Source of the DNA: Asterias rubens
Lineage: Eukaryota
Length of the DNA: 64,000 nucleotides
Direction of reading: 5' to 3'
NCBI RefSeq assembly: GCF_902459465.1
Contig: NC_047081.1
Coordinates: 7,564,001 to 7,628,000, forward strand
In this document: positions 34,566-62,171 of the stretch, in pieces
Layout: every line of letters begins with the position of its first letter
Numbering within the stretch: position 1 is the first letter of the stretch
The notes under the pieces: model-generated
Seen by the model: only the letters and a program-made list of their open reading frames with translations
Databases searched by the model: none
What the model was told of the DNA's origin: nothing
Translations under genes and position numbers: made by a program

Positions 34566-34707
34566 NNNNNNNNNNNNNNNNNNNNNNNNNNNNNNNNNNN
34601 NNNNNNNNNNNNNNNNNNNNNNNNNNNNNNNNNNNNNNNNNNNNNNNNNNNNNNNNNNNNNNNNNNNNNNNNNNNNNNNNNNNNNNNNNNNNNNNNNNNN
34701 NNNNNNN
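34566..34707. other. Assembly gap (142 N)
   Basis: Run of N. Confidence 1.
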
Positions 34708-39810: not shown

Positions 39811-41610
39811 ACAATGAAAACTTACAATATGAAACAAGGCGGTCTCATCACATTGGCACGTTCCCCTCCCCTGTGCCCTCATTGGAAATCTGGACGTTTT
39901 GATTTTAAAGGATTTGGGTACCTTTTCAAAATGTCCATATATTTTCATTAAACTTACAGGGTTTAAAGATTATGATAGTGGAAAGCTTCCCTTCAAATAC
40001 TTCTTACGGGGGTGCTGTAGTTTTGAGAAACATCGACATGAAAATACGTTTGTAAAATGATTAAAATAATTTTCGTCTCATGAGAAGACAATTATTTTCA
40101 TGACATTGTTTTCCCAAAAACTACTGCACCTCAGCGGGTAATATTTTCAGTGAAGCTTTCTACTATCATTATTTTCAAACTGTGTAAGTTTAGTGTAAAT
40201 ATGTGGACATTGTGTTTTTTGTCGTACAAAAATTACATAGACCCTTTAATGCAGAGAGTAAAACATTATATTTTTCCACATTTACACGCATTCGATGTAA
40301 TTGTTTTGACATTTTCGTCATAATTATCTCATAGCAAATGACACAATAAGAACTTTAAAAGGGGTTCGTTTAATATTAATTGCAAAGTATGCCTTAGTGT
40401 TTTTTTTTCGGAAACGTTTGATTGTTTTTATATTTAGTGTATAGGTTGTATACAATAAAACACAAAGATTACATTTTTGTGGGGGAATAAAAACAGATAT
40501 ACTTTTCACACAACATATATAACTTCTAAGTGAAATGTTTCTCAAAATGCGTTAAACAATCGGAAGCTGCAGTATGACCAATAGTTTGTATTGCTACTAA
40601 TTTAAGAATTATCTCAACGTATACATTCCCTTCTGAAATCTATAACACCAAATATTTGTTTCAAACTTACCTCGGGTGAGTAGCAGGATACAGAACAAAT
40701 CGTTTACGAGAAGTTAAGCCTCAGGCCCCTATAGTCAGCCTAGTCGTAGGCATTGTCGTCTAATGAAGAAATACCCCAGGACTTTAACAGAGGGCCCCAG
40801 AACGACATCAGCAAAATTACCTTAACAAGTCATAATATTGTGTAGGCTGTCGTGGGCATCACACCACAGAAACATCTACTACTACGCATGCAGTCCGGTC
40901 TCTGTGGTCAGGTCTGGTCAGAAAATGTGCGGGAAACGACTTTAAAGGCGCGACTGCAAATCAAGCGGCTGTGGGCTAAGGCTGTGTTAGGAAGCAACAG
41001 CGAAAACGTCATAGGACTTTTGGGCATTCGGCCGTAGCCAATGCTAGAAGCCGTTATTTTGGACACAGCCTATCACAATCAGAGTATTGTGTGCAAAGGG
41101 ATGTTGTCGCAGCCACGTGATGAACATTGGGATCGAGTTTCTTTTATTTCACGTGATGAATTAACTACGGAAGCTTAAAGCTGTCAAATCACTTTCCATT
41201 TTTCCAGTATTTTACCGTTGAAAGACTTGGCTTCGAATGGCTGAACCTTGGCCCAATTTCACGGCTCTGCTTATCGTAAGCAAATAATCTGCGCTTGCGG
41301 AAGCAGGGAATTCTGTGCCTTTGTCAAGCGTATCTCACGGGCTAGGGCGGGGAATGCGAGCGGAGAATGGTGATCGACAAGTGCAGAGTTCGGCGGTAAG
41401 CAGATCCATGAACTTGGGCACTGTCTCCGCGATCAACGGCCCCTGGGGAAGCCAAATACATTGCAAACCGGAATATGTATTTTTTGGGTGTGAGTTTTAT
41501 GCAATTTCTGTCATTTGTTTGGCCCGGCAACATGGATATGTAGATGCCCACTAATTTAAGAAAAAAAAACCACTTGTCACACGAGTGTGCTTTTAGATGC
41601 TAGATGCAGC

Positions 41611-42368
41611 AAAGGCAGTGGACACTATTGGCAATTTATTTAAAATAATTATTAGCATAAAAACCTTACTGTAATGGGGAGAGGTTGATAGTATAAAACA
41701 TTGTGAGAAACATTGTGAAGTAACGTAGGTTTCGAGAAAGAAGTAATTTCCCACGAATTTGATTTCGAGACCTCTGAATCAAGCATCTGAACGCACACAA
41801 CTTCGTGTGACAAGGATGTTTTTTATTCACTATTATCTCGCAACCTCGACGACCAAATGGGCTCGTCGACGACCAATTGAGCTCATTCTTTCACAGGTTT
41901 GATATAGTTTATGCAAATTATGTTGAGATACACCAAGTGAGAAGACTGGTCTTTAAAAAAATACCAATAGTGTCCAGTGTCTTTAAAGGGAAGGAAGGTA
42001 CGCGTTTGGTAAATGTCGAAGACCAGTCTTACCACTTGGTGTATCCCATCATAACCATAAAATAACAAGCCTGTGAACATTTTGGCTAAATTGGTCATCG
42101 AAGTTACGAGAAAAACGATGAAAGAAAAATCATCCTTGTTATACGAATTTGTGTGCTTTCAGATAAGAATAAAAATTACCTCTAGCTAGAAGTCTGTATT
42201 ATTTTAGTGAGAAATTGCCTCTTTCAAAAAAAAAACTACGTTACTTCAGAGGGAGCCGTTTCTCACAATGTTTTATACTATCAACAGCTCTCCAATGCTC
42301 GTTACCAAGTCAGTTTTTAAGTTAATATTTGTTAGGAGTAATTACCAAACGTGTACCTTCCCTTTTAA
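41611..42368. mobile_element. Two family A MITEs head-to-tail, sharing TTAA at 41983-41986
   Basis: The first ends GTGTCCAGTGTCTTTAA; the second begins AGGGAAGG...GTTTGGTAA and ends TTACCAAACGTGTACCTTCCCTTTTAA. Confidence 0.75.
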
Positions 42369-43285: not shown

Positions 43286-46200
43286 ATGGCGAAAAACAAG
43301 CTGTATTACATTTGGAATTTCATTGAGAAACCCGGCAAGCCGAAAAGTCCCTTTAATTCCTTTCTGGAGATGTGGACGGAAACCACAAACTACGTGAAGA
43401 AGAATCCACAGTTTTTGTCGACTCAGCTTCACCGAAACCTCAATCCAACTGGTGGTAAGTCTGACGACTCGATTACGAGTGTAGGCTGGGTTGGGTGTAA
43501 TGGCGGAGGGGTATAGTTTAGACATAATAAGTTTAGAGAACTGAAATGAAGTTGTGGTGATTAAAGTGATCGAAGTGTGGGTTCGAATCCCGGTCATGAC
43601 ACTCGTGTGTCCTTGAGCAAGATACTTTACTATAATTAGTTGATGTTCTTCACCCATGGGTATAAATGGGTGCCTGCGAGGGTGTGAGATGTGAAAAAGC
43701 CTTTGGGCTGCTACAGATACCCACAACAGGTTGTGTATTCTCCCTAGGGAGCTTTAAGGATTGCAAGAATGTTAATATTGGTCCAATGACCACCAGCCGT
43801 CGATTTCACAAAAAGTTAGGACACATCTTATCTCTTAGGACGAATAACTCGTCCTAACTTAGGACGAGTAACTCGTCCTAACTTAGGATTAATATTAAGG
43901 TATGCATGCTACAGTGCAGGGTTGGGACTCGTCCTAAGTCATAATCCTAAGTTAGGAAGAGTTTTGCGAAACCGACGGCAGGGCACCATTGCAAAGCGCA
44001 TTGATACGGTTATTGTAAAATGCGCTATATGTACGAATTTGCTATAACTTATTCGCATCTTACGCAAACAGCACACTAAACAACGAAGAAGTTTTAGTAT
44101 GGACCTTGTCATACAAGGTATTTGTTAGGCAGCGTGTAAGTTGCAGGGCAACTTCAGTGCATGACACAGGACCAATTTGGTAGCACATGATCATTTTTTC
44201 AAACTGCCTTCACGACCCCCAAGAAAAAGGAAGACTCCGCCCCTACATTCAAATGTGATTGCCTTTTCTTCTTGAAGGTTACCTTGGGAACTGGTTGCCT
44301 GTTAATTGCCCGATCGTCTTAAAAAAAAGAATAAACACACACAACATATCATATAGGGACTCAAAACTCAATTTACTAGAGTATGGGAATTGACCACAAC
44401 CTGTAAAAACATTTTAAGGCGGGGGGGGGGGGGTAGGCGCGGGGGGTCACAAGGGTGTGCGTCATTTTTGTATAGGGTGTGAAATCTGGAGGTGTTTTTT
44501 TCAAGTTGGTGGAAGAATTTGTGAAGAAAAATATTCTTGCTTTAAAATCCCGTTGTAATAGTAATGTTCGGATAATAAATGATTTCAAACTAGTGTGACA
44601 TCTTTTAACTGTTCTTCATATTCCATTTTACAGGAGCATTCCCTTGCGTGAACCACGCTGCCTTTGACGGGACAGACTTTGAAGGGTTCGGCAAGCCGAC
44701 TCCAAAATGGTTTGAAGTCCTCAAAGCCACGACAGGGGACACTGTTGCTCACCCAGGTACGTGTGAACTTCCAGATAATAGCATCTAGGTTCCGTAGGTC
44801 AGCGTAAAAGTAACAACTCCCTACGTCTTATGTTCAACTGCACAATATTACAAGCTGAAACATTTTGCGAAACACTGGCTGTAAAAATAACTGAGTAAAA
44901 AAACAATTATCCACTCATTACAGTACAATAAACAAATTGTCAAGCATTAATGTTGAGCAAGTCATACTTGAAACTTTGCATGAAGATATAATCCAGTGAT
45001 GCTATCTCTTTAAGTGATATGGTGGTTCTGAGAAGATCCATTGCTTTATAACCAACTCGACAAATTTGACTAAAGACCATTGCATCAATTTTTTTTTTCC
45101 TCGTCGTGTCCTTGTCTGTCTCAGGGAAATATACAAAAGCATTATGCTTAAAAAATGTCCCTGCATGTTGACTAATGTAAATTGTTGTAGTTATTATCTT
45201 CAAATTCTATGCATTGCATCTGTCCTTCGTTATTACGTTCATCGATATTTGTTTTCTAGTGTATGCTTAAATTGCTATTGTTGACATGAAAATAAATGTT
45301 CATTGAATTGGATTGAACATTGAAACAAACTAATTGTCAACCATCAATGTTGGGCAAGTCATACCTGAAACTTTGCAAGTTTAAGGTACAATCATGTGAT
45401 GCACGCTCTTTGTGGTGGATTTGAGAAGAGTCGGTGCTGTAATAACCCGACCTTTCGTCTAAAGACCATCAAAGCATACTGATCGAAAGGTCGGGTGTAG
45501 TAACAACCCTCCACTTGTCATTGCAATATAAAAAAATATATATATATAAAGTGTTACCGGAAAATTTGAAACTTAAATGTTCTTATGTTAATGTTTGTGC
45601 TTATACTTTCCTGAGCTCTGTGAAAATAAAAATCATAGGAATATTACTCAGGTGGGATTCAAACCCACGCAGTTTCTTACCAACTGGACCACCGAGATTG
45701 CCCGGCAGCTATAGTAAATACAGAGGCAGTAAGACTGCTATACTTTCAGAAGCAGGTATACGCAAAGATGAAACGTTCTTTTGCTTTGTTTTTCCTTTGA
45801 TGATTTGTAAAAACTTACAGGCGGTTATCTTGAGTTTGGGACCACCACTGGGAAACCTCTTGGCCCATGGTTACCCAAGGATGATAAGACCACGTTCATC
45901 GTGACTGCATTTAAGGTAAGATTAAACGAAAACGAAGTAGTCAGTTGGGTGTTTCGTTTTATTGAGAAGTAGATTATGCTCAAACAAAGACATCTTAATT
46001 CGCCTAGCTCTTTCTCCCTTTTTGTTGTGCCAAAAATCCGCTATTCAACGTTTGCAGAGAGAACTTTCTCTGTAAATGGCCCCAAAATGTGAAATAAGCT
46101 TCCTGTTCAAATCAGAAATGCCAGCTCACTTACCTCGTTCAAGAAATTAAAGCTGATTTGTTTCAGCCGGCTTACAAATAAATCACCTGCACTAGTGGAA

Positions 46201-46990
46201 GTGTCGTGGCCGAGTGGAAGAGCACCGAATTCAAACTCTGGTGTTTCTGATGATCAGCAGAGTGTGGGTACGAATCCCCAGCCGTGACACTTAATGTGTC
46301 CTTAAGCAAGACACTTAAACATTGCTTCTTCCTTCGGATGGGACGTAAAGCCGATGGTCCAATGTGTTGTGTAACGCATGTAAAAGAACCCAGTGCACTT
46401 TTCGAAAAAAGAATGGGTTCGCCCCGGTGTTCCTGGCTGTGGCTGCTGTATGCGCCGTAGCACCTTGTAAACCCTTATAAGGTGCTGAATAAATGGGTCT
46501 CAAAATTCATCACTGCATCTTTCTGAAAGTTTGTATATAGACGATGTGACCTGTGACATCACATGTTTACAAAAGAGACACAGAGCAAGGACTTCCTGCA
46601 GGCATGCTTTGTATACAACTCAATGGAAGAAAACATAAAATCTTATATTTTATGGAGATTGCACTGTCTAATTCTTATCAACTTTTGATGTGGTGAAAGG
46701 GGGCACATCTCAAAACTTGACCAGCTTTTACTTCACAACTCTTGGTTTTATGTGAAAATTATGACACAAAAATATGTCAACATTCCCATAGGACCGGTGT
46801 AAGCAGCTTGCCTGCCAGAATACTCAAAGAATGTACAAGGTCACACTTATTGTAAACAAGGTTCACATGGTCTAAACTCAGCGCCTTGAGTACCTTGTTT
46901 GTTAGATACGCACGGTGCGCTATAATATAAGACTTCGATATCAGTGCATCCGCGCCTTTTAGAGCAAACCTTTGACTTTGCGCTCTATAA

Positions 46991-47022
<32 letters not shown>

Positions 47023-47635
47023 ATTGATTGGTTGATTAATTGATTGATTGATTGATCTGTCCTTTCTAAAACCATCAGAGTAATTTATCTTTTTCTCTGT
47101 CACTCTCTCTCTCTCTCTTTGTAATTGTATTAACTCCGTGAGAGACAAACGTGTCTGTCAAATGGTCGTTAGAGCTCGCCATTTTGTTCTGCATATTGTT
47201 TACGGTATCAATAATGAGAAAACGTCTTATCCAACACCATCCCAAAACCAACATCATTTAGTATCACTCTTTATATAGGCAGGTGACGAGAAGGACGCCA
47301 AAGCACAGGAAGCATTCGAGAAAGATTGGAAGGAATCTTCAGGAACCAACTTCATCCTCAAGAATGCTCCCAAGGAGCTCGGCATCTCTTACTGCGGCCT
47401 GTATAAGAAGTTTACTGAGCGTCCCGGGATACTCTACGTCCTCAGAGCTGAGCTGACCGGGGCTGGTGAGGACTCTGAGCCGGCCAAGACCTTCCTGGCA
47501 CAACTCAAGGAGTTCAAGTATCCGGACTATTTCCAGAAGGTGGACACCGATCTCTTCAAGCCGGACCAAGAAAATATTCATTTTTCCGAGGGTGGGGTGA
47601 GGGAGCTTCCGGCAGGCTTCGTGTGGAAGCCATAA
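43286..47635 (+). CDS. Tandem paralogue 1: two-domain ABM-like (dimeric alpha+beta barrel) protein, ~247 aa
   Basis: Join 43286-43454, 44634-44756, 45821-45915, 47279-47635; GT-AG introns, phases 1,1,0, open frame throughout. MAKNKLYYIWNFIEK...NPQFLSTQLHRNLNPTG-GAFPCVNHAAFDG...AHPG-GYLEFG...FIVTAFK-AGDEK...FEKDWKESSG...WKP*. Confidence 0.85.
43555..43795 (+). mobile_element. tRNA-derived SINE fragment in intron 1 of paralogue 1
   Basis: GGTTCGAATCCC followed by the GTCCTTGAGCAAG...GTATAAATGGGT core typical of invertebrate SINEs. Confidence 0.6.
46036..46165 (+). mobile_element. L2/CR1-type LINE ORF2 3' end fragment
   Basis: With a frameshift: YSTFAERTFSVNGPKM / NKLPVQIRNASSLTSFKK. Confidence 0.6.
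46197..46530 (+). mobile_element. tRNA-derived SINE in intron 3 of paralogue 1
   Basis: A box GTGGCCGAGTGG, B-box-like GGTACGAATCC, GTCCTTAAGCAAGACAC core; an inverted partial copy lies at about 3025-3200. Confidence 0.65.
46990..47118. repeat. (ATTG)n and (CT)n microsatellites
   Basis: Direct reading. Confidence 0.9.
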
Positions 47636-48021
47636 GCTCTGATAGAAACGCAGCAAACAAACCTGACCCGGTTTCAAAGAGCTGGTAATAGCAGAGAATA
47701 TTGCTTGTAAAATTTCTGCTCACCAGAAATGAGCAGGTTTCCATTCACACGAAGTTGTGTGCTTTCAGATGCTTGAGTTCGGGACCTTAAAATCTAATTC
47801 TGAGGTCTCGAAGTCAAATTCAAATAATTATATTCAAGTAGAAAATTACTTATTTCTCGAAAATGACATTACTTCAGAGGGAGCCGTTTTTTCCAAATGT
47901 TTTATACTATCAACAACTCTCGGGTTTTATGCTCACAAGTTTAGTGTTTGTGTATAATGAAGAGAAGCAGCGCAGTTTAAACCAGAAGCTTTTAACTTAT
48001 TGCCAAGAGATAATCAAACCT

Positions 48022-48356
48022 TTAAAGACACCGGACGCTATTGGTAATTGTCAAAGACCAGTCTTCACAGCTGGTGTATCTCAACATATGTAAAATATAA
48101 CAAACTTGTGAAATTTTGTGCTCAATTGGTCGTCAAAGTTGCAAGAAAACAATAAAAGAAAAAATACCCTGGTCATCCGAAGTTGTGTGCTTTCAGATGC
48201 TTGATTTCGAGACCTTCCGAAAACTATGTCACTTCACAGGGAGCCGTTTCTCACAATGGTTTAAACTTATCAACCCCTCCTCATTATTCATTACCAAGTG
48301 AGGTTTTATGCTAATAAATATTTTGAGTAATAACCAATAGTGTCCACTGCCTTTAA
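48022..48356. mobile_element. MITE family A
   Basis: TTAA + TIRs; flanked by a 49-bp direct duplication (see findings). Confidence 0.8.
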
Positions 48357-51109
48357 ACCAGAAGCTTTCAACTCATTGCCAAGAGATAAACAAACCTTTA
48401 AGTTTAAGACAACTATTTTTAACCTGTCGTTATAGGTAAATATATTTTCTATGATGTTGATATAAGATGCATTGAGTTATTAGAATAAAAAGTTGTTATG
48501 TAAAGACAATAAAAACAGTTTACGGTAACTGTAGATTTTAGGGTCTTTCGGATAGTCGTAAAGCCATTGGACACTTTCGGAACAGAAGAAAAAGTTCACA
48601 GATTTACTTATGTCATGACACGGCGAAACGTGCGGAAACAAGGGTGGGTTTTACCTTTATTTTTTCCCGACTCCGATGACCGATTGAGCCTAAATTTTCA
48701 CTGGTTTGTGATGCACGAAGTGTGGGCCTTTGAATAATACTGTTTCCCGAAAGTGTCCAATGGCTTTAAATGAACACATTGCCTTGGATAGGGAGAGTTG
48801 GTCTTTATAAAAAGTGTTTGAAACCGTTTGTTGTTAAATGTATAATGGTTGGAAAGATGTTTTAAAAGTAGAATACAATGATCCGCACAAATGCCTTAAA
48901 ATTGCGTGGTTTTCCTCTTTAGTTGTGAACCACAGTCGGCCATTTTGTTGACTCGAAATTTTGACTCAAAAAATGGCCGACCTTATTGGTTCGCGACGTA
49001 AAACGAAAACCGTGCAATTTCGAGGGATATTTATGTGGATCATTATATTCTATTTCAAACATCTTTCCGATCATTTTGATTTCTTAACAAACGGTTTCAA
49101 ATTTTTTCATGGACCAGCTCGACCGATCCAAGGCAACGTGCTCCTTTAATATTTTCTTTTTTTGCACAGGCAAGCTGTGGTCTGTATTGTTGCACTAATA
49201 CCAGATTTGTATGATGGTGTAATTCACACAATGCATTCGCTAGGTGCTGTCAAAGAGTGTCTTATAATAAATCTGCAATTGAATTGCACTGGCAAAGAAA
49301 CCAATTTTAGAGTGTCTAAGGTATTTGTTGACTGAATTGAATTTAGAAATTAATGTTAACTTTATGTGTTTAAAAAAAAGAGTCACTGTTAAGAATTATC
49401 TTTCTGATTCGGAGTGGAAAATTCTACAAAATAACGGGCCGTGCATCTGTCATTACATTACATGAAACCACATACTTTCAAGGGATGCTAACGTGATTAT
49501 TATATTCTGCTTTTAAAATCGTATTTCCCTAAACATTCATACACCGGGGGCTTGTTAGCCCTAAAACGCCCAAACCAGGAGGCTTTGTATCACTTTAAAG
49601 CGCAGGTATTCCGCCGGAAAGTAGAACCTTGACATTGGTCCTTGACATCCCGTGACTTACCCATATATTGAGCACAAAGGACCGTGTATAAAGTAAATAG
49701 CTGCAATGACTGGACGTTTTTGAAGTTATTAGCATGATAATGAATATTGAACTTTCCTGACCCAAAGCACTTTGCTAAAAAGGTTTTGTTTACATTTTGT
49801 AGTTTAAGTGTTTAGGCCATGCCATGAATCCCACTGTGAATGAAGATGTACGTAATATAGTTTACCTGTAGAAGTTTCCGCCTGATTGTCTCAAGAGTTT
49901 GAGAGAAAAGTGAAAATCACAGAACGATGTTGTCAGGAGAGTCGCGTATAATACCAGCAATGGTAAATACGTTGTAACTGCTATAAAACAATTTGTCTCC
50001 CGAAATTAGTTTAGTATGTAGGCCTAATAACGTTGGTATAATGGCGCGACATAATTTATTTTCGTCACATTTGTTACTTATTATTTATCAAAAACTACAG
50101 CAAGTATAATTTGAGGGACTTAAAGCTTTCTACCATAATTGTCTTCAAAACGTAACAAAAAGTACCCACATCCTCCCCTTAAAAAGGGGGTTTGGGGAAC
50201 AGGGAACTATTGGTACGGCATAAAACACAAACGTCGCAGATTTACATTCCACACCAGGGCCCAATTTCATAGCGCTGCTAAGCAAAACAAATTTGCTTAG
50301 CATGAAATTTCGTCCTTGATAAAAACAGGATTACCAACTGAATTTCTACGTGATTTTCAGGATAAGCGAACAACATCTGAATACCAGTAGCAATCAATAT
50401 TGAACAAATGAAAATTTGGTTGGTCATCCTGTTTTAGTCAAGAAAGAAATTTCATGCTTAGCAAATTGTTGTGCTTAGCAGCTCTATGACATTGGGCACA
50501 GATGGTATAGAACCCTATATCGAACAATTAAAATACTACTAGCTCCTCATGTACCGTGCGGTGCTCCTGTATTCCTTGCTGGTGAGGTGTTGTTTATAGT
50601 TTTGGGAAGCTACAGGTAAATTACATTACATGCATCTTCATTCATAGTAAGTGGGGACTCATGTCATGCGCTAAAAACTTACAAACTAAGGATATCAAAA
50701 CTCTGTTAAGCCAGATGGTGGTTTGCAAAGTGCCTTAGGTCATGAAAGTTTAAAATTCAGTATTGTGCAAAAACGTCCAGTCATTGCTGCTTGTTATTAT
50801 TATTATATTTATTTAGGTCATAAAAGTTCGATATATATTATTATGCTAATATTTACAAAAAGGTCAAGTCATTGCAGCCAACACAGACCATTGTGCCACC
50901 ACAAGGCGAGGATGCAGGTACGAATATTTCGGTTATTAAGCACAACGCAGTTTCATTTCACAAGTATTGAGAGGGACGCCCGTCCTCAAAGTCGACGTAT
51001 GCGCAGATTACTCAATGTGTAATATTAACCGTCGCAAAACCATCAAAAACGAAAAGCTCCCTAATAGACTGAGCAACTAGCCACCGCAAGCAAAACTAAC
51101 ACAACAAAA

Positions 51110-51635
51110 ATGGCAAAAAACGAGCTGTATTTCGTTTACAACTTCATCGAGAAACCTGTCGTGGTCCCTCCATTTAGATCCTACGTAGAGTCGTGGTTCC
51201 AGACGGTGCTCTACGTGAGAAAGAACCCACAGTTTCTGTCTACCCAGCTTCACCGAAACTTGAACCCGAAGGGTAAGTCGATCCTAATGACTCCAAAGCT
51301 GCAGTGGTTATTAATGTTCTACGTGGTCAGGGTCCCTCGCTGCAGACTTAACACAGCAGTGGTGCAAGTCAGAAAAAAGAATAAGGAAGGGGTGTTAAAA
51401 AGTACAAGTATTTAGTGATGATAATGATACAGAATGTTTTATGCAGACAAACAAAATGTCCCCCTGCAAGGGGGGGGGGGGGCTCCAATCCCTTGTGTCA
51501 GGCTAGTAGACCCTCATACACTCGCCATTGTCCACGCTTTAATTGGATTGATGAGCATTCGCTGATAATTTTCCATTTTAGTTGGGCACGCGCGTTGGCA
51601 ATTTGATGATACTTAAATAGGGCCGTAGGGATGAT

Positions 51636-51666
<31 letters not shown>

Positions 51667-53349
51667 GGGGGTGGGGGTGGGGGTGGGGTGGGGGTGGGGG
51701 ACATTATGGGAACAACCAAGAGGCAGTGGGAATTTGCCATGTACCATAAAATGAGCTACCCTGGATCATGGGAATGGGCTACCCTGGATCATGTGAATAA
51801 GCTTCCATGGATCATCGGAATGAGCTAGATCATAGACTGATTTTTACTTAGTATCTTGTTCTACCTCTAAAGAGTATTTTTCAATCTTCCATAACCGACA
51901 GGGAAATACCCCCTCGTGAACTATGCTGCCTTTGACGGGACAGACTTTGAAGGCTTTGGCAAGCCATCTGAAACCTGGGATAACGTACGTAAAACATCCG
52001 TGGGGTCGACTACTATGCATCCAGGTAAGTCTGGAATAAACGAGCGTGAACAAAAATTATTCAGTTTTACTTCCCTCGATCTTTAAAGGCAGTGGACACT
52101 ATTGGTAATAACTAAAAATAATTAGTAGCATAAAACCTTACTTGGTAAAGAGTAATGGGGAGAGGTTGATAGTAGAAAACATTGTGAGAAACGGCTCCCT
52201 CTGAAGTGACGTAGTTTTCGAGAAAGAAGTAATTTTCCACGAATTTGATTTCGAGACCTCAGGTTTAGAATTTGAGGTCTCGAAATAAAGCATCTGAAAG
52301 CACACAACTTCGTGTGACAAGAGTGTTTTTTTTTTTTCATTATTATCTCGCAACTTCGATGACCAACTGAGGTCAAATTTTCACAGGTTTGTTATTTTAT
52401 TACATTTTTTTTGTTGAGATACACTAAGTGGGAAGACTTGTCTTTGACAATTATCAATGGTGTCAAGGGTCTTTAAAACATCACGATGGTACCACTGGCA
52501 AACGCATAATCTCCCCGCCCCTTTAGAATTCGAACATGAAACGCTCCATACAGTCCATAAATTGTCCGTGGGTATATACCAGCTCTTATAATATTTTAAT
52601 AATTTGTCAACTTACAGGCGGTTATCTTGAGTTTGGGACCACCACTGGGAAACCTCTTGGCCCATGGTTACCCAAGGATGATAAGACCACGTTCATTGTG
52701 ACTGCATTTAAGGTTGGTATTTATAAATATAACAGTTAATAAACTGTCACTTTTATCATTAACATCTTTAAACAAATTCAAGGGATTACAATATTTTTAA
52801 ACTCGTGGAATTTTGTCCGCCTGTTTTTTTTTTATTATAGTTATAGCTCGTTTGTTTTTAACTGCTTTTACTTTTTATTTAATGAGAGACAATTTAAATG
52901 TTATTGTTTTAACTGTCATCAAATCACGGTTTATATCAAAATTGAGACTAGGATGTGTATGCCTCATGATAGTTTTGTTTGCACTTGTTTAGGCAAGTGA
53001 CGAGAAGGACACCAAACTCCAGGAGGCATTCGAGAAAGATTGGAAGGAATCTTCAGGAACAAACTTCATCCTCAAGAATGCTTCCAAGGAGCTCGGCATC
53101 TCTAACTGCAGCCTGTATAAGAAGTTTACCGAGCGTCCCGGGTTGCTGTACGTCCTCAGAGCTGAGCTGACCGGGGCTGGAGTGGACTCTGAGCCGGCCA
53201 AGACCTTCCTGGCGCAACTCAAGGAGTTCAAGTATCCGGACTACTTCGAGAGTGTGGACACGGATCTCTTCATGCCGGACCCAGGAAATATTCAATTTCC
53301 TGAAAGTGGGAAGAAGGAACTTCCAGCAGGATTCACATGGAAGCCATAG
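51110..53349 (+). CDS. Tandem paralogue 2: two-domain ABM-like protein, ~245 aa
   Basis: Join 51110-51272, 51902-52024, 52618-52712, 52993-53349; GT-AG introns, phases 1,1,0; same exon architecture and motifs as paralogue 1. Confidence 0.85.
52083..52476. mobile_element. MITE family A in intron 2 of paralogue 2
   Basis: Near-consensus copy with TTAA flanks. Confidence 0.85.
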
Positions 53350-54282
53350 ACATAGCTTGGCAAGGAAACGCAGCAGCGGTCGATTTCACTAAAAATTTTA
53401 TAGGATTAATCTTAGGACTTAGGACGAGTAAAGTTCCGTATCCAAATACGTAGGACGCATTGAACCCATCCTAAGTTAGGACGGGTTTCTCGTCCACACT
53501 CGAGATAGGATTAATTATAGCGTTTCTCGGAAATGGCTGTATGAATCATAAGGTAGCTACTCTAGTACAAATACCTCAGAAAGATTTGTCTTTTTAAATG
53601 TTTGCCTATGGAAGAATTAGATTGATTCGTTAAATCTTGAACAATCACATTTTGGAAGAGAAAATTGTATGACAATTTCTAGCTGTAAATTTAGAAATGA
53701 ATAACCAAAGGTGAAAAGAATGAAAAAAATTGTTCCTGATCGTCAACCTTTTAAAAATGCGTAGCAGTAGTTTTAAATAGAATTAAAGTAGACGTTGTTT
53801 TTCAAAATGTACTGGATATAGGCCTACAACTTTGGTAATTTTCAAAGACCAGTCTTCTTATTTTGTGTATCCCAACATGCATAAAGTAACAAACATGTGA
53901 ACAATTTGAACTCAGTCGGTCATCAAAGTTGCGAGATAACAATGAAAGAGAAAACACCATTGTCGCATCCCAGTTCTGTGCTTTTGTATGATGCATTGAA
54001 TTAGAGACCTCAGCTGAAGTCTCGAATTCAATTCAAATAATTTAGTGGGAAAACAATTCTTTCTCAAAAACTACGTTACTTCAGAGGGAGCCGTTTCTCA
54101 CAATAAAACCAAACAATAATACGGTCAAATCTTGATTTTGTTAACAAACTATACTATAGAGGTTTTCATCAACAGGCTTAGTGACAAAAGTAGGCCTACT
54201 ATAGGTGTTATATAACATTGAAATCTATATTTTCAGTTATCATTGATAGACAAAACCAAAATATTTCAAAACCATTTCGCTC

Positions 54283-54666
54283 TTAAAGGCAGTGGACACT
54301 ATTGGTAACTGTCAAAGACTAGCTTTACAGTTGGTGTATCTCTCTAAAATGCATAAAATAACTAACCTGTGAAAATTTGAGCTCAATCGATCATCAAAGT
54401 TGCGAGATAATGTAAGAAGAAAACACCCATGTCACACGAAGTTGTGTGCGTTTAGATGCTTGATTTCGGGACCTCAAGTTGTAAACGTGAGGTCTCGAAA
54501 TCAAATTCGTGGAAAATTACTTCTTTCTCAAAAACTATGGCACTTCAGAGGGAGCTGTTTCCCACAATGTTTTATACAACCAACCTCTCCCCATTACTGG
54601 TCACCAAGAAAGGTTTTATGCTAATAATTATTTTGAGTAATTACCAATAGTGTCCACTGCCTTTAA
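54283..54666. mobile_element. MITE family A
   Basis: Both TIRs and TTAA flanks; abuts a family B element. Confidence 0.85.
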
Positions 54667-55561
54667 AGGGAAACATTGCATTGGATCATGCGAGTTGGTC
54701 TATGGAAAGCGTTTGATGGTTGAATAGATTAAAAGTAAGAATGAAATTATCTACAAAAAACAACCTCAAAATTTCACGGTTTTCCTTAACGTCGTGGAAC
54801 ACGGCGCGCCATTTTGTGAACTCAAGATAATTTGACTCCACAAAATGGCCGATCGTATACGTTCGGAAAATGAAAGGAAAATCATGCATTTTCTAGGCAT
54901 GTTTATGTTGATCATCATATTCTACTTTTCCGCATTTCATAATAAATGTTTTCAACCGCTATCATAGTTCAACTCGCACAATCCAATGTGTACGTATTCC
55001 TTTAATCTCTATTTTTGTGCCAAAGTGTAAATGAGTATGTTATTTTCATTACCCGGAGGTAGAATAAATACACATTCATGAAAGTCACATTGAGTTTTAG
55101 AAGCAGTACCGTATCAGTTTGTTACCGCGTCTGGGTTCATGATGAATTATTCACGATTTGGACTTGGTGAATACATTTTGAGATTATCACAATCCGATGA
55201 TCCCTATACTAAAAGCGATAAGGAGTTGTTGATAGCGACGTCCACTGACCTTGGATTAAATTTAAATAAATATAATTTTCAAAATAATTAATATGAAACA
55301 ATATTCAACCAAGCTTGTTATACCGTAAAAAATGTACACCTCAAATTATGCACTGCATCTTCTAATATGTTAAAAGATACACCATATTCCTTCAGTAACA
55401 TTTAAAATTTATTTTAATGCTGTCACACAGAATATCAATGCACATTATGTCGAAATTATAGATACACACAATGGTTCAAAAATAAGCAGCAATTTAAAGA
55501 CAACTTTTAGATTATAAGGAAAGCGAGATGCTTTTGTTCACTAAGCGGTTATACCTTTCGA

Positions 55562-55944
55562 GCCAGTGGACACTACTGGTAATTGCCACAGACTAGCCTT
55601 CACAGTTGGTGTCTCTCAACATATGCATAAAATAACAAACCTGTGAAAATTTGAGCTCAATCGGTCATCGAACTTGCGAGATAATAATGAAAGAAAAAAA
55701 CACCCTTGTCACATAAAGTTTGTGTGCGTTTAGATGGTTGATTTGGAGACCTCAAGTTTTAAAACTGAGGTCTTGAAATCAAGTTCGTGGAAACTTCCTT
55801 CTTTCTATGGCCTTTCAGAGGGAGCCCTTTTTCACAGTTTTTTATACCATCAACCTCTCCCCATTACTCGTTACCAAGTAAGGTTAAATGCTAATAATTA
55901 TTTTAAGTAATTACCGGTATACCAATAGTGTCCACTGCCTTCAA
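55562..55944. mobile_element. MITE family A, ~320 bp upstream of paralogue 3 ATG
   Basis: TIRs and conserved body. Confidence 0.8.
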
Positions 55945-56261
55945 ATATAGACCTGCGAACCCCTGTAACAGTGGGCGTGACTTTCTGTGGATTTTATCAT
56001 GATTGACATAATCCTTCAATTCATGCAGGATTGCTCCAAACATTAGTAATATCAAGGTCACATGAAGAATGATATCTACAAGCGTATAGGTCATTGTATA
56101 CAAAACTAACCCAATTGCACAAACAGTCGGTTTATTGACACAATTTCGGCTTCGCACGCTAGGATTAAAGAGGCCCTTTGGTGACCTCGGTTGGTAAAAT
56201 ATTTTAATGGTAGTATAAACTGCTAGAGCAGAACCGACGACGTGGATCATTGCACTTCAAC

Positions 56262-59200
56262 ATGGCCGCCAGCAAGCCAAATCTGTTTTACATTTGGAAC
56301 TTCTTCGAGAAGACCGGGGGCTATAGCTCTCGTTTTTCGTCTTTCGTAGATTATTGGACGTTCGCCGCCAACGTCGTGAGGAAGAATGATGACTACATAG
56401 CGACTCAGCTGCACCGAAACCTCGACCCAAAAGGTAAAAACGTATACTGAGGGTATTCGAATTAGAGCTAAATTATAGCCTGAACTCAAACCGTGTTAAC
56501 TGTTACGTTTTTGACATGTAGCTTTACTATGAGAGCTATACCACCATGCATAATGTGTGTGTACCACTCATAGATCACTGGGTCCTTCGTCTGGTGATAC
56601 ACTAGTATGTGTTCAAGACTCTCCTGCTATTAATACCTGAACCAATGCCACAAGAGGGCGTGCTCACCCTTGACAGCTGGAAATTAACCGCATGAGATAG
56701 TAAGATAACAAACATCCAAAAGTGTCTTGAACAAAGGCTAGTGGTCTACCCGACGTTCACGTTTTTAGAGTACCAACGTACTGTTAAATTAGCCCAGGCT
56801 GGACTCACAGTGGCACTGACTGACGTCCAACAAGGCTACTATACAACTGCATAGACCTATATTAGTGGGCGTGACTGTCTGTGGATTTTATCATGATTGA
56901 CACATCAGGAGTCTGGCTCTTTGATTGTGTAATAATGTAAGTAGGATTTGAAACTGTGCATGGTGGAAATACGACATGGAAAGGTTTTCAGTAACACTAT
57001 ATATGTACTGACTATCTCTAATGAGTTGGGGTGGTTCTGAAAAGAACCGTTGATTTCAACTCGACGTTTTGATCAGAGCATACTGATCGAAACGTCGAGC
57101 TCCAGAAGGCGATCAGAGCATCTGAGTGAAACGTCGAGTTGAAACCAACGGTTCTCAGAACCACCCCAACTCATTAGAGATAGTCATTACATGGTGTTAC
57201 CGCAAACTTTTTCATAATGGTAACAATGTACTTTAGCTATCTCCAGAAGAGGATCAGAAGAATACTTTTTGCAACGTCGAGTTGAAACCAACGGGAAGCC
57301 AACTCATTTAGAGATTATCATTACAGGGTGTGTGACCACAAACATTTCTCTACTTTAAACGCGTTTAACTAAACTTTTAGACTTACAACTCAAGTAATAG
57401 GATAATAAATGATGATAAGTTTGAAAACTGCTTGGAAATTCCTTTAAAAAACTTTTTTTTGTAAACGTAGCCCCTACATTGAGCTTGGTTAATTTTGTTT
57501 TCAAACAATTACCGATTAATCTATAATATTGTGAAACAGATAGAAATGACAATGAGCACAGATACTTGTATCAATAGAACATAAACAAATTATTTTTGTT
57601 GTATACCCAAGAACTTGCTTTTTATCGTGAAATGCAGTGCCTCAAAATTGAACCAAAGTGTTTAAGTTCATTTCCAGCTTTCTCATAATAATAAAGGTTT
57701 TAAGGAGGGTGGTGATAAGGGCTAAAACTCTGCCTTCTTGCTACTCGAAAGGTCCTGAATGGTGACCAACCAAGTAGATGGTACTTAAGACAAACCTAAA
57801 TCATAAACAGTGCTAAAAACGAGGCCGAAAATAAAAGGTTAAACGTATGACCGGACACAACAACAAGATACTCGTGAGGTTGTGTTTTTGGTGAAATAAG
57901 TCAGTATTTGAAATAAGTCAGTATTTGAAGCGGTTATTACGTGCGTCATCAGTTTTGTTTTGTCGAAGAATCACAACCTACTTGCCATGTTTTTGTCGTA
58001 ACTGTAATTGACTGTGATGAACTTAAAACAGCTGTGATGCCTGCTGTAATTCCCTGTTTGTTCCGCTCCCCAAAAAATTCAACATATGTTTTTATTTGGG
58101 GTGAAGCGGGTCCTTTATATATGTCACCTTTCTTGAGGATAAGAGTCTTACACTTTTTGTCTCATCAGGCTGAACTTATTATCACAAACATTCATCTATT
58201 CGATCGTACGGAGCCCCTAAAGGGACAGGTAAAAAGAAAGTTGAAAAGGTATAACAAAAATAGCAAAAAAAAATCGTCCCCTCGAGATACTATTTCATTA
58301 CCTCGAAATCATTTTGTTCACTCGAAATATAATTTCGTTTCCATCAAAGTAATATCGTTACCTCAAAATACTATTTCATGGGAAGAAATAACATTTCGAG
58401 GTAACGAAATAACAGTGTTTTAATTACAATTTCAATGTTGTATTCCCGATCGGGAACAATTCTGTTAAGAAAGTTAGTTTGCAAGTTTTCAAAACTTTTA
58501 CCAACAGCTACCTTCCCATACGTGAATCATGCTGCGTTTGATGGAACGACCTTTGCAGCTTTCGGGCAAAGCAAACCAACAGCGGAATGGATGGAAGTCG
58601 CGAAAGAAGGACGTGGCGGCACGGGCACCACGGTAGCCTACCCGGGTAAGTCGTCAAAAAAACACGGCCTATTAAAAGTCCAAGTCACGCTGCAAAAATA
58701 TTTCACATGGCACTGGACAATATTGGTATTTACTCAATATTGTTAGCATAAAAAATTACTAGGTAACGAGCAATGAAGAGCTGTTGATAGTATAACACAC
58801 TGTGAGAAACGGTTCCCTCTGAAGTAACGTAATTTTTGAAAAAGGATGAGATTCTCACTAAAATATTTGAATTGAATAGCTGAACTCGCATTCAAGCATC
58901 TGTACAACAAGTAGCGTGTTTTAGTACAGCAAGGGTGTTTTTACCTAATCCATTACTCTCCCGCAACTTCGACGACCAACTGAGTTAAAATGTTCACAGC
59001 TGGGTTTGCATATGTTGAGATACATCAAGTGAGAAGACTGGTCTTATGTTGAGATACATTAAGTGAGAAGACTGGTCTTTTGACAATATTATTATCAAGG
59101 GTGTCCAGTGTCTTTAACCTAAACAAAACTTCAACGTTGTGGTCCGTTATATAAAATACATAAGCCCCGAGCGAGTTGACATACAGATGTTTTTACACAA

Positions 59201-60261
59201 TCGAGTCATTAATTATCTCAAGTATACTGAATATTAATTAACCCCTTCTCCCGTTTAACGTTACAGGTGGATACAAGGAGATCGAGTCTACCACCGGCAA
59301 ACCACTAGGTCCTTGGCTGCCCAAGGGTGATAACATCTTTCTCGTGTCAGCTTTTAAGGTACGGTTGACGACATCACATATCTATTCGTTCAAACATTTT
59401 AAACACGGAAAACGAATCGATAAAGTTAAGCAATCGATGTTTCGTTTCGAGCCAGTGTTGTTGACTCCAGTAAGTGTTGTTGACTGGAGTCGTTGTCTTG
59501 GACTCGAGTCGTGACTTCACTGGCTTGCGACCTGACTTGACTTTTGAAGAAAAACAAATGACTTATGACTTATCTTGACTTGAGCAAGAATGCATTGTCG
59601 CTTGACTTGAGCAAAACTTACTTGACTTGGTTTGAGCAAAAATGACTTGTTGCGACTTGACTTGATTTGAGAAAAAAAATTACTTGGCCAAAAACTGGCT
59701 ATACAGTTCTCGTGTTGGCAAGGATTTTCACGTGGGATGTTAAACTTTGCATTGTTGGTGAGGTTTGCGGTAGTATCTATCGTAATCTCTTTTGAGAATA
59801 TTGTTGCTCTGGAGTTGAGTACCACGGGTTCTTTTCAGAACGAACTATAAAATATCTCACTTGAATTTCACGTGGTGCTTTATTTTTGTTCGTGATAACA
59901 GGTAGCTGATGAGAAGGACACCAAACTCCAAGAGGCATTCGAAAAGGACTGGAAGGAATCTTCAGGAACCAACTTTATCCTCAAGAATGCTCCCAAGGAG
60001 CTCGGCATCTCTAACTGCGGCCTGTATAAGAAGTTTACCGAGCGTCCCGGGTTGATGTACGTCCTCAGAGCTGAGCTGACCGGGGCTAGGGTGGACTCTG
60101 AGCCGGCCAAGACCTTCCTGGCGCAACTCAAGGAGTTCAAGTACCCGGACTATTTCCAGAAAGTGGACAATGAGCTTTACATGGCGGATCCAGAAAACAT
60201 AATTTTCCCTCAAGCGGGGAAGAAAGATCTCCCGGAAGGCTTGGCGTACAAACCAGAGTAA
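56262..60261 (+). CDS. Tandem paralogue 3: two-domain ABM-like protein, ~253 aa
   Basis: Join 56262-56433, 58508-58645, 59267-59358, 59902-60261; GT-AG introns, phases 1,1,0. MAASKPNLFYIWNFFEK...YIATQLHRNLDPK-ATFPYVNHAAFDG...AYPG-GYKEIE...FLVSAFK-VADEK...YKPE*. Confidence 0.85.
57009..57320. mobile_element. Penelope-like terminal-repeat remnant with degenerate minimal hammerhead-like motifs
   Basis: Inverted arms around repeated CTC-CAGAAG(G/A)-GATCAG-loop-CTGATC-GAAACGTC-GAG units. Confidence 0.45.
58709..59117. mobile_element. MITE family A in intron 2 of paralogue 3
   Basis: Degenerate TIRs, conserved body, small internal duplication at about 59010-59080. Confidence 0.75.
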
Positions 60262-60519
60262 ATACGCCACCCAATGGAAAAGAAAACCGTCATTCATACG
60301 GATTTGCTTCTTATCGCGAACATTTTTACTCTAAGATCGTCAACATACAGTGTCAAAATTTCCTCGAATTTGACCGAAGCTTTTTTTGGATGGACTCTTC
60401 CCTCCTTTTGGTCAATTGGTGGTGGGGGAGGGGGAGGGGGGTCCGACACGCCCTTTTTTAGTAACGGTCCTGCTTCAGTAAATACGTCACACAATGGAAA
60501 GAAAACCATGTCGGTCAAA

Positions 60520-61999: not shown

Positions 62000-62171
62000 A
62001 TGGCCGCCGACAAGCAAAATTTGTTTTACATATGGAATTTCTTCGAGAAGACCGGGGGCTATAGCACTCGTTTTTCGTCTTTCGTAGATAATTGGAAATT
62101 CGCCGCAGAGGTGGTGAAAAAGAACGAAGAATACATAGCGACACAGCTGCACCGAAACCTCGACCCAAAAG
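62000..62171 (+). CDS. Tandem paralogue 4, coding exon 1 only (remaining exons not seen before the window end)
   Basis: MAADKQNLFYIWNFFEKTGGYSTRFSSFVDNWKFAAEVVKKNEEYIATQLHRNLDPK followed by a phase-1 donor G|GTAAAA. Close homologue of paralogue 3 exon 1, with shared flanking sequence. Confidence 0.8.

What the first reader, a model, noticed from the sequence alone, without database searches (positions are those of the whole stretch)
44634..60200. Exon-restricted homogenisation (gene conversion) of the C-terminal domain versus diversification of the N-terminal domain
Seen: exon 3 of paralogues 1 and 2 is identical at 94 of 95 nt, yet the flanking introns are unalignable beyond about 9 nt of acceptor. 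Exon 1 of the same pair matches at only about 36 of 55 aa, with many synonymous changes even in the conserved KNPQFLSTQLHRNLNP block. Exon 2 has a perfect 29-nt patch (GCTGCCTTTGACGGGACAGACTTTGAAGG) inside divergent sequence. Exon 4 of paralogue 3 is nearly identical to those of 1 and 2 over its first ~260 nt although its exons 1-3 belong to the other subfamily. It is also mosaic, sharing sites alternately with paralogue 1 (GCTCCC, TGCGGC, TATTTCCAG) and paralogue 2 (TCTAAC, TTTACC, GTGGAC). Inference: recurrent patchy conversion keeps a near-constant C-domain (possibly a shared interaction or partner surface) while the N-domain varies in specificity. Tracts ending at exon borders could reflect homology limits or cDNA-templated conversion.
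Basis: partly seen in the sequence, partly recalled or inferred. Interest (0 to 1): 0.7.

Follow-up and report, generated by a model that had tools for sequence, protein, structure and literature searches.

The report
Patchy gene conversion among starfish paralogues
Five neighbouring copies of an uncharacterised starfish gene keep copying short pieces of their last two exons onto each other while their first two exons drift apart; this is a clear but ordinary case of gene conversion between tandem duplicates.

Summary
The window is Asterias rubens chromosome DNA. It carries a tandem array of 4-exon DUF7153 genes: P1-P3 complete, P4 exon 1, with the rest of P4, P5 and an exon-4 pseudo-fragment just beyond the window.

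Synonymous divergence differs greatly along the gene:
- P1 vs P2: exon 1 dS 1.17, exon 2 0.72, exon 3 0.05, exon 4 0.24.
- Subfamily A (P1, P2) vs B (P3-P5): saturated everywhere except the first ~260 nt of exon 4 (dS 0.17-0.29).

Synonymous constraint does not explain this, because the same stretch is saturated between Patiria and Acanthaster and evolves at the normal rate between A. rubens and A. amurensis orthologues.

The A. amurensis cluster, with 1:1 orthologues of all five genes, shows conversion after speciation:
- The first 20 nt of A. rubens P1 exon 3 were overwritten by P2 sequence.
- Seven of 24 informative sites in exon 4a separate P5 from its own orthologue.

Independent DNA and RNA contigs confirm the assembly and the splicing.

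Best reading: recurrent short interlocus gene conversion from genomic DNA, confined by homology and selection to exon 3 and exon 4a. Templating by cDNA is not needed and has no positive support, but it is not excluded. This is a new example of a known process.

The parts
43286..47635 (+). P1 (LOC117303850, 247 aa). Exons 43286-43454, 44634-44756, 45821-45915, 47279-47635.
   Evidence: The GT-AG model equals P0001 at 100%. All three splice junctions are seen in spliced contigs of runs X5 and X15.
51110..53349 (+). P2 (LOC117303629, 245 aa). Exons 51110-51272, 51902-52024, 52618-52712, 52993-53349.
56262..60261 (+). P3 (LOC117303873, 253 aa), subfamily B. Exons 56262-56433, 58508-58645, 59267-59358, 59902-60261.
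62000..62171 (+). Exon 1 of P4. Exons 2-4 lie beyond the window, at extended coordinates 64100-64237, 64816-64907 and 65453-65812. P5 is at 67374-69834 and an exon-4 pseudo-fragment at about 72386-72564.
   Evidence: The exon is 100% identical to exon 1 of the A. amurensis orthologue.
45822..45840 (+). Post-speciation conversion tract in P1 exon 3 (nt 2-20). At 8 sites A. rubens P1 carries the P2 base, while A. amurensis P1 keeps the older GGYTEIG-type sequence.
   Evidence: 0 of 200,000 permutations. The intron just upstream stays P1-type in both species. DNA contigs of X1 and X3 and RNA contigs of X5 and X15 show no differences here.
47288..47520 (+). P1 exon 4 nt 10-242: the block homogenised across all five paralogues. 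The only fixed A/B difference inside it is at nt 45.
53002..53234 (+). P2 exon 4 nt 10-242: the same homogenised block.
59911..60143 (+). P3 exon 4 nt 10-242: the same homogenised block, a mosaic of P1-like and P2-like sites.
44657..44685 (+). 29-nt perfect patch in exon 2 of P1. Its twin in P2 is at 51925-51953. It encodes the conserved AAFDGTDFEG motif. It may be an old micro-conversion or a chance run; this was not resolved.
   Evidence: The runs test does not single it out.

Best explanation
Recurrent, short, non-reciprocal interlocus gene conversion between tandem DUF7153 paralogues, templated by the neighbouring genomic copies.

Shown: exchanges have happened repeatedly, before and after the A. 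rubens / A. amurensis split. They have homogenised exon 3 within each subfamily and about nt 10-242 of exon 4 across all five genes and the pseudo-fragment.

Inferred: the tracts stay inside exons because the introns have lost all homology. Intron lengths differ 2- to 9-fold between paralogues and change by hundreds of nt even between the two Asterias species. Heteroduplex can therefore only form and resolve inside the longest conserved coding block. Converted alleles that would carry foreign sequence into exons 1-2 or the last ~90 nt of exon 4, which are subfamily-specific, are either not formed for lack of homology or removed by selection.

The result is a family whose second ABM lobe is nearly constant and whose first lobe and C-terminal strand differ between copies.
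For: 1. Synonymous divergence is very uneven.
- P1-P2: 1.17, 0.72, 0.047 and 0.236 for exons 1-4.
- A vs B: saturated in exons 1-3 and exon 4b, but 0.17-0.29 in exon 4a.

2. This is not synonymous constraint.
- Exon 4a is saturated between Patiria and Acanthaster and between Asterias and both outgroups (dS 1.3 to infinity).
- Orthologue dS in exon 4a (0.088 pooled) is not lower than in other exons (0.029-0.127).

3. Signals break orthology in the 10-sequence comparison with A. amurensis.
- In exon 4a, R4-R5 differ at 8 sites, against 13 for R4-A4 and 16 for R5-A5.
- R5 groups with R4/A4 at 92/93 support, and R1 exon 3 groups with P2 at 97/91.
- 7 of 24 informative exon-4a sites split R5 from A5, and 4 exon-3 sites put A1 with subfamily B.

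4. Clustering of differences.
- 8 of the 18 R1-A1 differences fall in one 19-nt window and all 8 equal the P2 base (0 of 200,000 permutations).
- A Sawyer-type runs test gives p = 0.0002 (R1-R2, exon 3), 0.0004 (R4-R5), 0.0004 (A2-A5, between subfamilies) and 0.007 (R3-R5, A2-A3).

5. Fixed A|B sites make up 31/103, 16/27 and 15/34 of informative sites in exons 1+2, exon 3 and exon 4b, but 5/24 in exon 4a.

6. The frame-broken pseudo-fragment still matches the genes closely over exon 4 nt 72-260 by eye (identity not computed). Protein-level selection cannot explain that.

7. GC3 is highest in exon 4a (0.71 against 0.50-0.64), as biased conversion predicts. This is weak evidence.

8. Introns do not align between paralogues except for 2-50 nt next to exons, and each flank is orthologue-specific.

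9. Assembly and gene models are confirmed by an independent species assembly and by DNA and RNA contigs of four runs.
Against: - AU tests on the short single-exon alignments are only marginal: p = 0.086 for the R5+A5 clade and 0.074 for the R1+A1 clade.
- The direction of the P4/P5 exchange cannot be polarised without a third Asterias-like genome.
- The timing of the A/B duplication relative to the valvatid outgroups is unresolved: the Asterias A+B clade has only 74/87 support.
- The exon-4a block could therefore owe part of its similarity to one older replacement event plus later patches.
- Nothing directly shows that the template was genomic DNA rather than cDNA.
- The GC3 excess is small, and Acanthaster, for which only one copy was fetched, has 0.68.
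Confidence: 0.8

Rival explanations
1. The conversions are templated by spliced cDNA (reverse-transcribed mRNA of a paralogue), which would by itself explain why introns are never co-converted.
For: - Homogenisation is confined to exons, with dS far below intron divergence. This is the criterion used to argue for cDNA donors in fungal ribosomal-protein paralogues (PMC6993855).
- The post-speciation tract in P1 exon 3 starts within 10 nt of the acceptor, while the intron keeps P1 sequence.
- P1 is transcribed and spliced.
- In another assembly (L031, GCA_014845345.1) a P1-like copy has exon 3 and exon 4 fused exactly, with intron 3 missing and the acceptor of intron 2 kept. Loss by recombination with a cDNA is the textbook explanation for such a pattern.
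Against: - All five Asterias genes in both species keep all three introns. No tract has therefore ever crossed an exon junction.
- Both ends of the A/B block lie inside exon 4, at about nt 10 and nt 242-268. Its limits are set by homology or selection, not by exon borders.
- P1 and P2 also share about 25 nt of intron upstream of exon 3, which a cDNA could not carry. Splice-signal constraint could explain this instead.
- The endpoint of the P1 tract has roughly a one-in-three chance of falling where it does under a genomic template.
- L031 is a truncated copy without exons 1-2, from an unidentified species.
- Germline expression is unknown.
Confidence: 0.1
2. One ancient chimeric event (unequal crossing-over or replacement of exon 4a) followed by ordinary divergence, rather than recurrent conversion.
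For: A/B dS in exon 4a is fairly uniform (0.17-0.29), about 3-6 times the orthologue dS. This fits a single older homogenising event for most of the block.
Against: - The block is a mosaic: P3 shares sites alternately with P1 and P2.
- P2 is as close to subfamily B as to P1 in exon 4a.
- There are significant inter-subfamily runs in A. amurensis (A2-A5, p = 0.0004).
- There are post-speciation events in exon 3 and exon 4a.
- A crossover would also have carried exon 4b and the 3' flank, and these stay subfamily-specific.
Confidence: 0.06
3. No exchange at all: exon 3 and exon 4a are simply under strong constraint at the nucleotide level (codon bias, RNA structure, or the antisense ORFs that overlap exon 4).
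For: - Antisense ORFs of 80-112 aa overlap exon 4 of P1-P3.
- Exon 4a encodes the most conserved protein segment.
Against: - Exon 4a synonymous sites are saturated between Patiria and Acanthaster and between Asterias and both outgroups.
- Orthologue dS there is normal or high.
- Trees and site patterns break orthology.
- The pseudo-fragment shares the similarity.
Confidence: 0.02
4. Assembly artefact: collapse or mis-joining of near-identical exons.
For: None found.
Against: - Each exon sits in locus-specific intron flanks that are the same in the independent A. amurensis assembly.
- DNA contigs from two studies bridge intron 2 and exon 3 of P1.
- RNA contigs from two further studies join P1 exons 1-2-3-4, with no differences in the converted tract.
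Confidence: 0.01

Closest known systems
Mosaic interlocus gene conversion / concerted evolution in tandem paralogues (e.g. mammalian BMP8A/B, DDX19A/B, TUBG1/2, PMC2720389; 'islands of divergence' in converted paralogues, PMC3728101)
   Same: - Close, same-strand tandem copies.
- Part of the gene kept alike for a long time while other parts diverge.
- Paralogues in places more alike than orthologues.
- Significant GENECONV-type fragments.
- Somewhat raised GC3 in the converted part.
   Different: In the mammalian cases the converted fragments span introns as well as exons. Here no intron interior is shared, and the tracts are tens to about 230 nt long, wholly inside exons 3 and 4.
Exon-only concerted evolution of fungal ribosomal-protein paralogues, attributed to cDNA donors (PMC6993855)
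   Same: dS between paralogues is far below intron divergence, and flanks are not homogenised.
   Different: - Those pairs are dispersed and homogenised over the whole coding sequence.
- Many of those copies lack introns.
- Here only a sub-exon block is homogenised, the copies are tandem, and all introns are kept.
- A genomic template limited by homology explains the pattern equally well.
Pfam DUF7153 / two-lobe ABM-type (dimeric alpha+beta barrel) proteins such as anthrone-oxidase-like protein 5f9p and putative monooxygenases 3mcs and 3f44
   Same: - Pfam DUF7153, E = 1e-18, above the cut-off.
- AlphaFold model with pLDDT 93 and two beta-alpha-beta-beta-alpha-beta lobes.
- Foldseek probability 1.0 to tandem ferredoxin-like monooxygenase-type chains.
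   Different: - Sequence identity is about 10-14% and TM only about 0.5.
- No catalytic residues or ligand are known.
- The closest relatives named by the searches are all echinoderms; the more distant representatives carry no names.
- No paper mentions DUF7153.

Membership tests
Interlocus gene conversion (concerted evolution) | Synonymous divergence between paralogues differs sharply between segments of one gene | tested here: met
   P1-P2 dS is 1.17 / 0.72 / 0.05 / 0.24 for exons 1-4. A vs B is saturated except in exon 4a (0.17-0.29).
Interlocus gene conversion (concerted evolution) | Low divergence is not due to constraint on silent sites | tested here: met
   Exon 4a dS is saturated between genera. 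Orthologue dS in exon 4a is 0.088, against 0.029-0.127 elsewhere.
Interlocus gene conversion (concerted evolution) | Paralogues within a species more alike than orthologues; gene trees of segments disagree | tested here: met
   R4-R5 differ at 8 sites, against 13 and 16 for their orthologue pairs. R1 exon 3 groups with P2. AU tests are only marginal (p = 0.07-0.09).
Interlocus gene conversion (concerted evolution) | Statistically significant shared fragments (GENECONV-type runs) | tested here: met
   pairwise p = 0.0002-0.007, and three survive Bonferroni correction for 10 pairs; scan statistic, 0 of 200,000 permutations.
Interlocus gene conversion (concerted evolution) | Raised GC at silent sites of the converted part (biased conversion) | tested here: inconclusive
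   GC3 is 0.71 in exon 4a against 0.50-0.64 elsewhere, but Acanthaster exon 4a is 0.68.
Interlocus gene conversion (concerted evolution) | Non-reciprocal transfer (donor unchanged) | tested here: met
   For the P1 exon-3 event, P2 is the same in both species and only A. rubens P1 changed.
cDNA-templated gene conversion | Exons homogenised, introns and flanks not | tested here: met
   This is also expected from homology-limited genomic conversion.
cDNA-templated gene conversion | Tracts that cross exon-exon junctions, or intron loss in a converted copy | tested here: not met
   All 10 Asterias genes keep three introns. The A/B block ends inside exon 4. Intron 3 is missing only in the truncated copy L031 of another assembly.
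cDNA-templated gene conversion | Donor expressed in the germ line together with reverse-transcriptase activity | not testable with these tools
   Only the presence of spliced P1 RNA in two runs of unknown tissue is shown.
Pfam DUF7153 (two-lobe ABM-like) | Profile match above the curated cut-off | tested here: met
   68.2 bits against a cut-off of 27, residues 44-207.
Pfam DUF7153 (two-lobe ABM-like) | Tandem ferredoxin-like fold | tested here: met
Pfam DUF7153 (two-lobe ABM-like) | Monooxygenase or other catalytic activity | not tested
   No assay was possible and no literature exists.

The most novel reading that the evidence does not exclude
The exon-limited tracts are made by recombination with spliced cDNA of a neighbouring paralogue in the starfish germ line. 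The intron-3-less exon 3+4 copy seen in another assembly (L031) would then be a by-product of the same process. That would be a rare documented case of RNA-mediated conversion between intron-containing animal genes.
Probability: 0.1. Interest if true: 0.65.

Novelty: new member of a known kind. Interest (0 to 1): 0.32.

Why it matters
It is a clean, well-bounded example of sub-exon concerted evolution in an echinoderm, with a conversion event that can be dated to after the A. rubens / A. amurensis split and whose donor and acceptor are known.

Practical consequences:
- Whole-gene trees and whole-gene dS for this family will mislead. Exons 1-2 give the duplication history; exon 4a does not.
- RefSeq's 217-aa model for P4 probably uses the wrong first exon.

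Biologically, the pattern marks the second ABM lobe as the part that must stay the same in all copies. It marks the first lobe and the C-terminal strand as the parts that distinguish them. That is a starting point for working out what these uncharacterised echinoderm proteins bind or do.

It does not open a new mechanism.

Tried and rejected
- **Synonymous constraint or antisense ORF.** Rejected as an explanation of low dS by outgroup and orthologue dS.
- **Assembly artefact.** Rejected.
- **AU topology tests.** On single exons they were only marginal, so the clustering tests carry the argument.
- **Dating the A/B duplication.** I tried with ophiuroid and crinoid outgroups. The N-terminal tree puts Asterias A+B together at only 74/87 support, with long outgroup branches. 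'Concerted evolution across orders' can be neither claimed nor denied.
- **GC3.** A weak signal only.
- **The 29-nt exon-2 patch.** It could not be shown to be a conversion tract.
- **Species of assembly GCA_014845345.1 (L031).** Two literature searches gave nothing.
- **Checking whether L031 as a whole is cDNA-like.** I compared its neighbouring transporter gene with Asterias and found no match in the DNA fetched.
- **Literature.** Nothing on DUF7153. A phrase search for cDNA- or RNA-mediated gene conversion together with intron loss returned nothing.
- **Patiria paralogues.** dS is 0.13-0.21 in exons 3-4 against 0.37-0.52 in exons 1-2, the same tendency but much weaker. I did not test it formally.
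- **Not run.** No complex prediction was run, because no binding claim is made.
Full report
**What is there**

The window is G000:C21:7564001-7628000 of a 417.6-Mb eukaryotic genome. Protein searches identify it as Asterias rubens.

From 43286 onward the + strand carries a head-to-tail array of four-exon genes with conserved intron positions and phases (1, 1, 0) and canonical GT-AG introns:

| Gene | Extent | Exon lengths (nt) |
|---|---|---|
| P1 | 43286-47635 | 169 / 123 / 95 / 357 |
| P2 | 51110-53349 | 163 / 123 / 95 / 357 |
| P3 | 56262-60261 | 172 / 138 / 92 / 360 |
| P4 | exon 1 at 62000-62171 | rest beyond the window |

I fetched 16 kb beyond the window. It holds the rest of P4, a fifth gene P5, and a frame-broken fragment of exon 4.

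P1 and P2 form subfamily A; P3-P5 form subfamily B. P1-P3 equal the RefSeq proteins LOC117303850, LOC117303629 and LOC117303873.

All five match Pfam DUF7153. An AlphaFold model of P1 (pLDDT 93) shows two ferredoxin-like beta-alpha-beta-beta-alpha-beta lobes. Foldseek places it with two-lobe ABM-type chains: an anthrone-oxidase-like protein and putative monooxygenases, at TM about 0.5 and 10-14% identity. Exon 4 encodes lobe 2 except its first strand, which lies in exon 3. The last ~30 residues (exon 4b) form the final long strand and the tail.

**Check of the observation**

- Exon 3 of P1 and P2 matches at 94/95 nt.
- Exon 1 matches at 36/54 aa.
- The 29-nt perfect patch in exon 2 is present.
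- P3 exon 4 is 90.5-92.4% identical to P1 and P2 over its first 264 nt, but about 66-68% over the last 93 nt.
- All six mosaic motifs occur as listed.

Two details need correcting. The P1/P2 similarity around exon 3 runs about 25 nt into intron 2. The block shared by both subfamilies ends inside exon 4 on both sides, not at exon borders. Fixed A/B differences sit at nt 2, 5, 9, 45 and 243 and become dense from nt 269.

**Is it more than constraint?**

Nei-Gojobori dS per exon:

| Comparison | Exon 1 | Exon 2 | Exon 3 | Exon 4 / 4a | Exon 4b |
|---|---|---|---|---|---|
| P1 vs P2 | 1.17 | 0.72 | 0.047 | 0.236 | – |
| A vs B | saturated | saturated | saturated | 0.17-0.29 (4a) | saturated |
| Within B | 0.3-0.55 | 0.3-0.55 | 0.05-0.21 | 0.05-0.21 | – |

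Three controls show that silent sites of exon 4a are not unusually constrained:
- Between Patiria miniata and Acanthaster planci, exon 4a dS is saturated.
- Between Asterias and either outgroup it is 1.3 to infinity.
- Between A. rubens and A. amurensis orthologues it is 0.088 pooled, not lower than in the other exons (0.029-0.127).

The pseudo-fragment has frame-breaking deletions, yet it still matches the genes closely over exon 4 nt 72-260 (by eye; identity not computed). Protein-level selection cannot maintain that.

**Comparison with the sister species**

A. amurensis has 1:1 orthologues of all five genes and of the fragment, in the same order. My models for them translate exactly to the annotated proteins.

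In exons 1 and 2, orthologues differ at 0-9 nt and paralogues at 20-74 nt. Elsewhere orthology is broken in two places.

1. *P1 exon 3.* A. rubens P1 differs from A. amurensis P1 at 9 sites, but from P2 of either species at only 1-2.
   - Eight of the 18 differences between the two P1 orthologues lie in one 19-nt window (exon 3 nt 2-20; window 45822-45840).
   - All eight equal the P2 base (0 of 200,000 permutations).
   - A. amurensis P1 keeps GGYTEIG, the form also seen in Patiria, Acanthaster and L031. So P2 was the donor and A. rubens P1 the acceptor, after the species split.
   - The intron immediately upstream stays P1-type in both species.

2. *Exon 4a of P4 and P5.* R4-R5 differ at 8 sites, against 13 for R4-A4 and 16 for R5-A5.
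   - R5 groups with R4/A4 at 92/93 support.
   - Seven of 24 informative sites separate R5 from A5.

A Sawyer-type runs test on polymorphic sites gives:
- p = 0.0002 for R1-R2 across exon 3
- p = 0.0004 for R4-R5
- p = 0.007 for R3-R5
- p = 0.0004 for A2-A5, an exchange between subfamilies in A. amurensis
- p = 0.007 for A2-A3

AU tests on these very short alignments are only marginal (p = 0.07-0.09).

**Assembly and expression**

Spliced contigs of two runs (X5, X15) join P1 exons at exactly the modelled junctions. DNA contigs of two other runs (X1, X3) bridge intron 2 and exon 3 of P1. None shows any difference in the converted 19 nt. Together with the independent A. amurensis assembly, this excludes collapse or mis-joining.

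**Why exons only**

Paralogous introns align only for 2-50 nt next to exons, and each flank is orthologue-specific.

Intron 3 is 1363, 280, 543, 545 and 159 nt long in P1-P5. Even orthologous introns of the two Asterias species differ by hundreds of nt of indels.

The simplest reading is that conversion needs homology on both sides of a tract. The only long homologous block left is exon 4a, with exon 3 as a second block within each subfamily. Each conversion renews that homology, so the island maintains itself.

The 3' limit at about nt 242-268 of exon 4 lies in coding sequence. I infer, but did not test, that the final strand and tail have to match the subfamily-specific first lobe, so that conversion there is selected against.

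GC3 is highest in exon 4a (0.71 against 0.50-0.64). This agrees weakly with biased conversion.

**cDNA templating**

The exon-only criterion used for fungal ribosomal-protein paralogues (PMC6993855) is met here. It does not discriminate, because homology-limited genomic conversion predicts the same pattern.

Arguments against cDNA templating:
- No Asterias copy has lost an intron.
- Both ends of the A/B block are internal to exon 4.
- P1 and P2 share about 25 nt of intron before exon 3.

One hint in favour: in contig L031 of assembly GCA_014845345.1, a P1-like copy has exon 3 and exon 4 fused exactly, behind an intact intron-2 acceptor. The species is unknown. Its sequence is 82-87% identical to Asterias in these exons, and I infer another sea star. 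That copy lacks exons 1-2, so its status is unclear.

I put cDNA templating at about 0.1.

**The 'diversifying N-domain'**

Exons 1-2 escape conversion and diverge, but dN/dS stays below 1:
- 0.25-0.49 for P1-P2
- 0.26-0.91 within B
- about 0.7 for exon 1 between orthologues, based on 13 nonsynonymous and 5 synonymous changes

Relaxed constraint or subfunctionalisation is as good a reading as positive diversification.

The timing of the A/B duplication relative to valvatid sea stars is unresolved.

Patiria paralogues show the same tendency much more weakly: dS 0.13-0.21 in exons 3-4 against 0.37-0.52 in exons 1-2.

**Verdict**

The cluster evolves by recurrent, patchy interlocus gene conversion confined to exon 3 and most of exon 4.

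This is a well-known process. The case is a tidy new example with a datable event, in an uncharacterised echinoderm family.

My Pfam, fold and gene-model results agree with it.

Noticed in passing
L031:3243-3722 (assembly GCA_014845345.1, contig JACSEG010000907.1): A P1-like copy in which exon 3 and exon 4 are fused exactly (intron 3 missing). It sits behind an intact intron-2 acceptor, with no exons 1-2 on the contig. A second partial copy of the exon-4 end plus 3' UTR lies about 600 nt downstream. The species could not be identified.
   Followed up: partly
extended coordinates 72386-72564 (G000:C21:7636386-7636564), beyond the window: Exon-4 pseudo-fragment at the end of the array, present in both Asterias species. 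It starts at about exon 4 nt 72, has 12-, 1-, 5- and 3-nt deletions, and still matches the functional genes closely over nt 72-260 (by eye; identity not computed). It shares single sites with individual genes (nt 121 with A5, nt 171 with R4/R5), so it may act as donor or acceptor.
   Followed up: partly
window 62000-62171 and extended 64100-65812: The RefSeq protein for P4 (LOC117303984, 217 aa) starts with a different short first exon and omits the exon 1 found here. The A. amurensis orthologue is annotated with the full 253-aa structure, and its exon 1 is 100% identical in nucleotides.
   Followed up: partly
window 43492-44147, 46116-46935, 47592-47900 and many other places (e.g. 39468-39819, 41716-42368, 48018-48362, 52121-52482, 54279-54672, 55553-55950): High-copy interspersed repeats (SINE/MITE-like, about 150-400 nt) fill the introns and spacers of the array. 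Contig depth there is 10^4-10^6 times that of the exons. They account for much of the intron length differences between paralogues and between the two Asterias species.
   Followed up: no
L026:18725-22115, L028:1-5882, L029:1-7796: A microsomal-triglyceride-transfer-protein-like gene (Vitellogenin_N + MTP lipid-binding domains, about 886-901 aa) lies next to the DUF7153 array in A. amurensis, Patiria miniata and Acanthaster planci. Synteny is conserved, but the orientation differs.
   Followed up: no
window 47339-47677 (-), 53053-53295 (-), 59962-60297 (-): Antisense ORFs of 112, 80 and 111 aa overlap exon 4 of P1-P3. They are most likely a by-product of the GC3-rich sense codons. Outgroup dS shows no extra constraint on this stretch.
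   Followed up: partly
extended coordinates 68834-69223 (P5 intron 2) versus A. amurensis: P5 intron 2 has nearly the same length in the two species (390 vs 387 nt) but only about 60% identity, far below the other orthologous introns (mostly 75-98%). In A. rubens it contains a repeat also found in P3 intron 1. This suggests independent insertions or replacement.
   Followed up: no
G000:C6:17017152-17017433: The only other match to the family in the genome: a distant relative, 30% identical over residues 142-232, on another chromosome.
   Followed up: no
window 34566-34707: A run of 142 N (assembly gap or masked stretch), left untouched.
   Followed up: no
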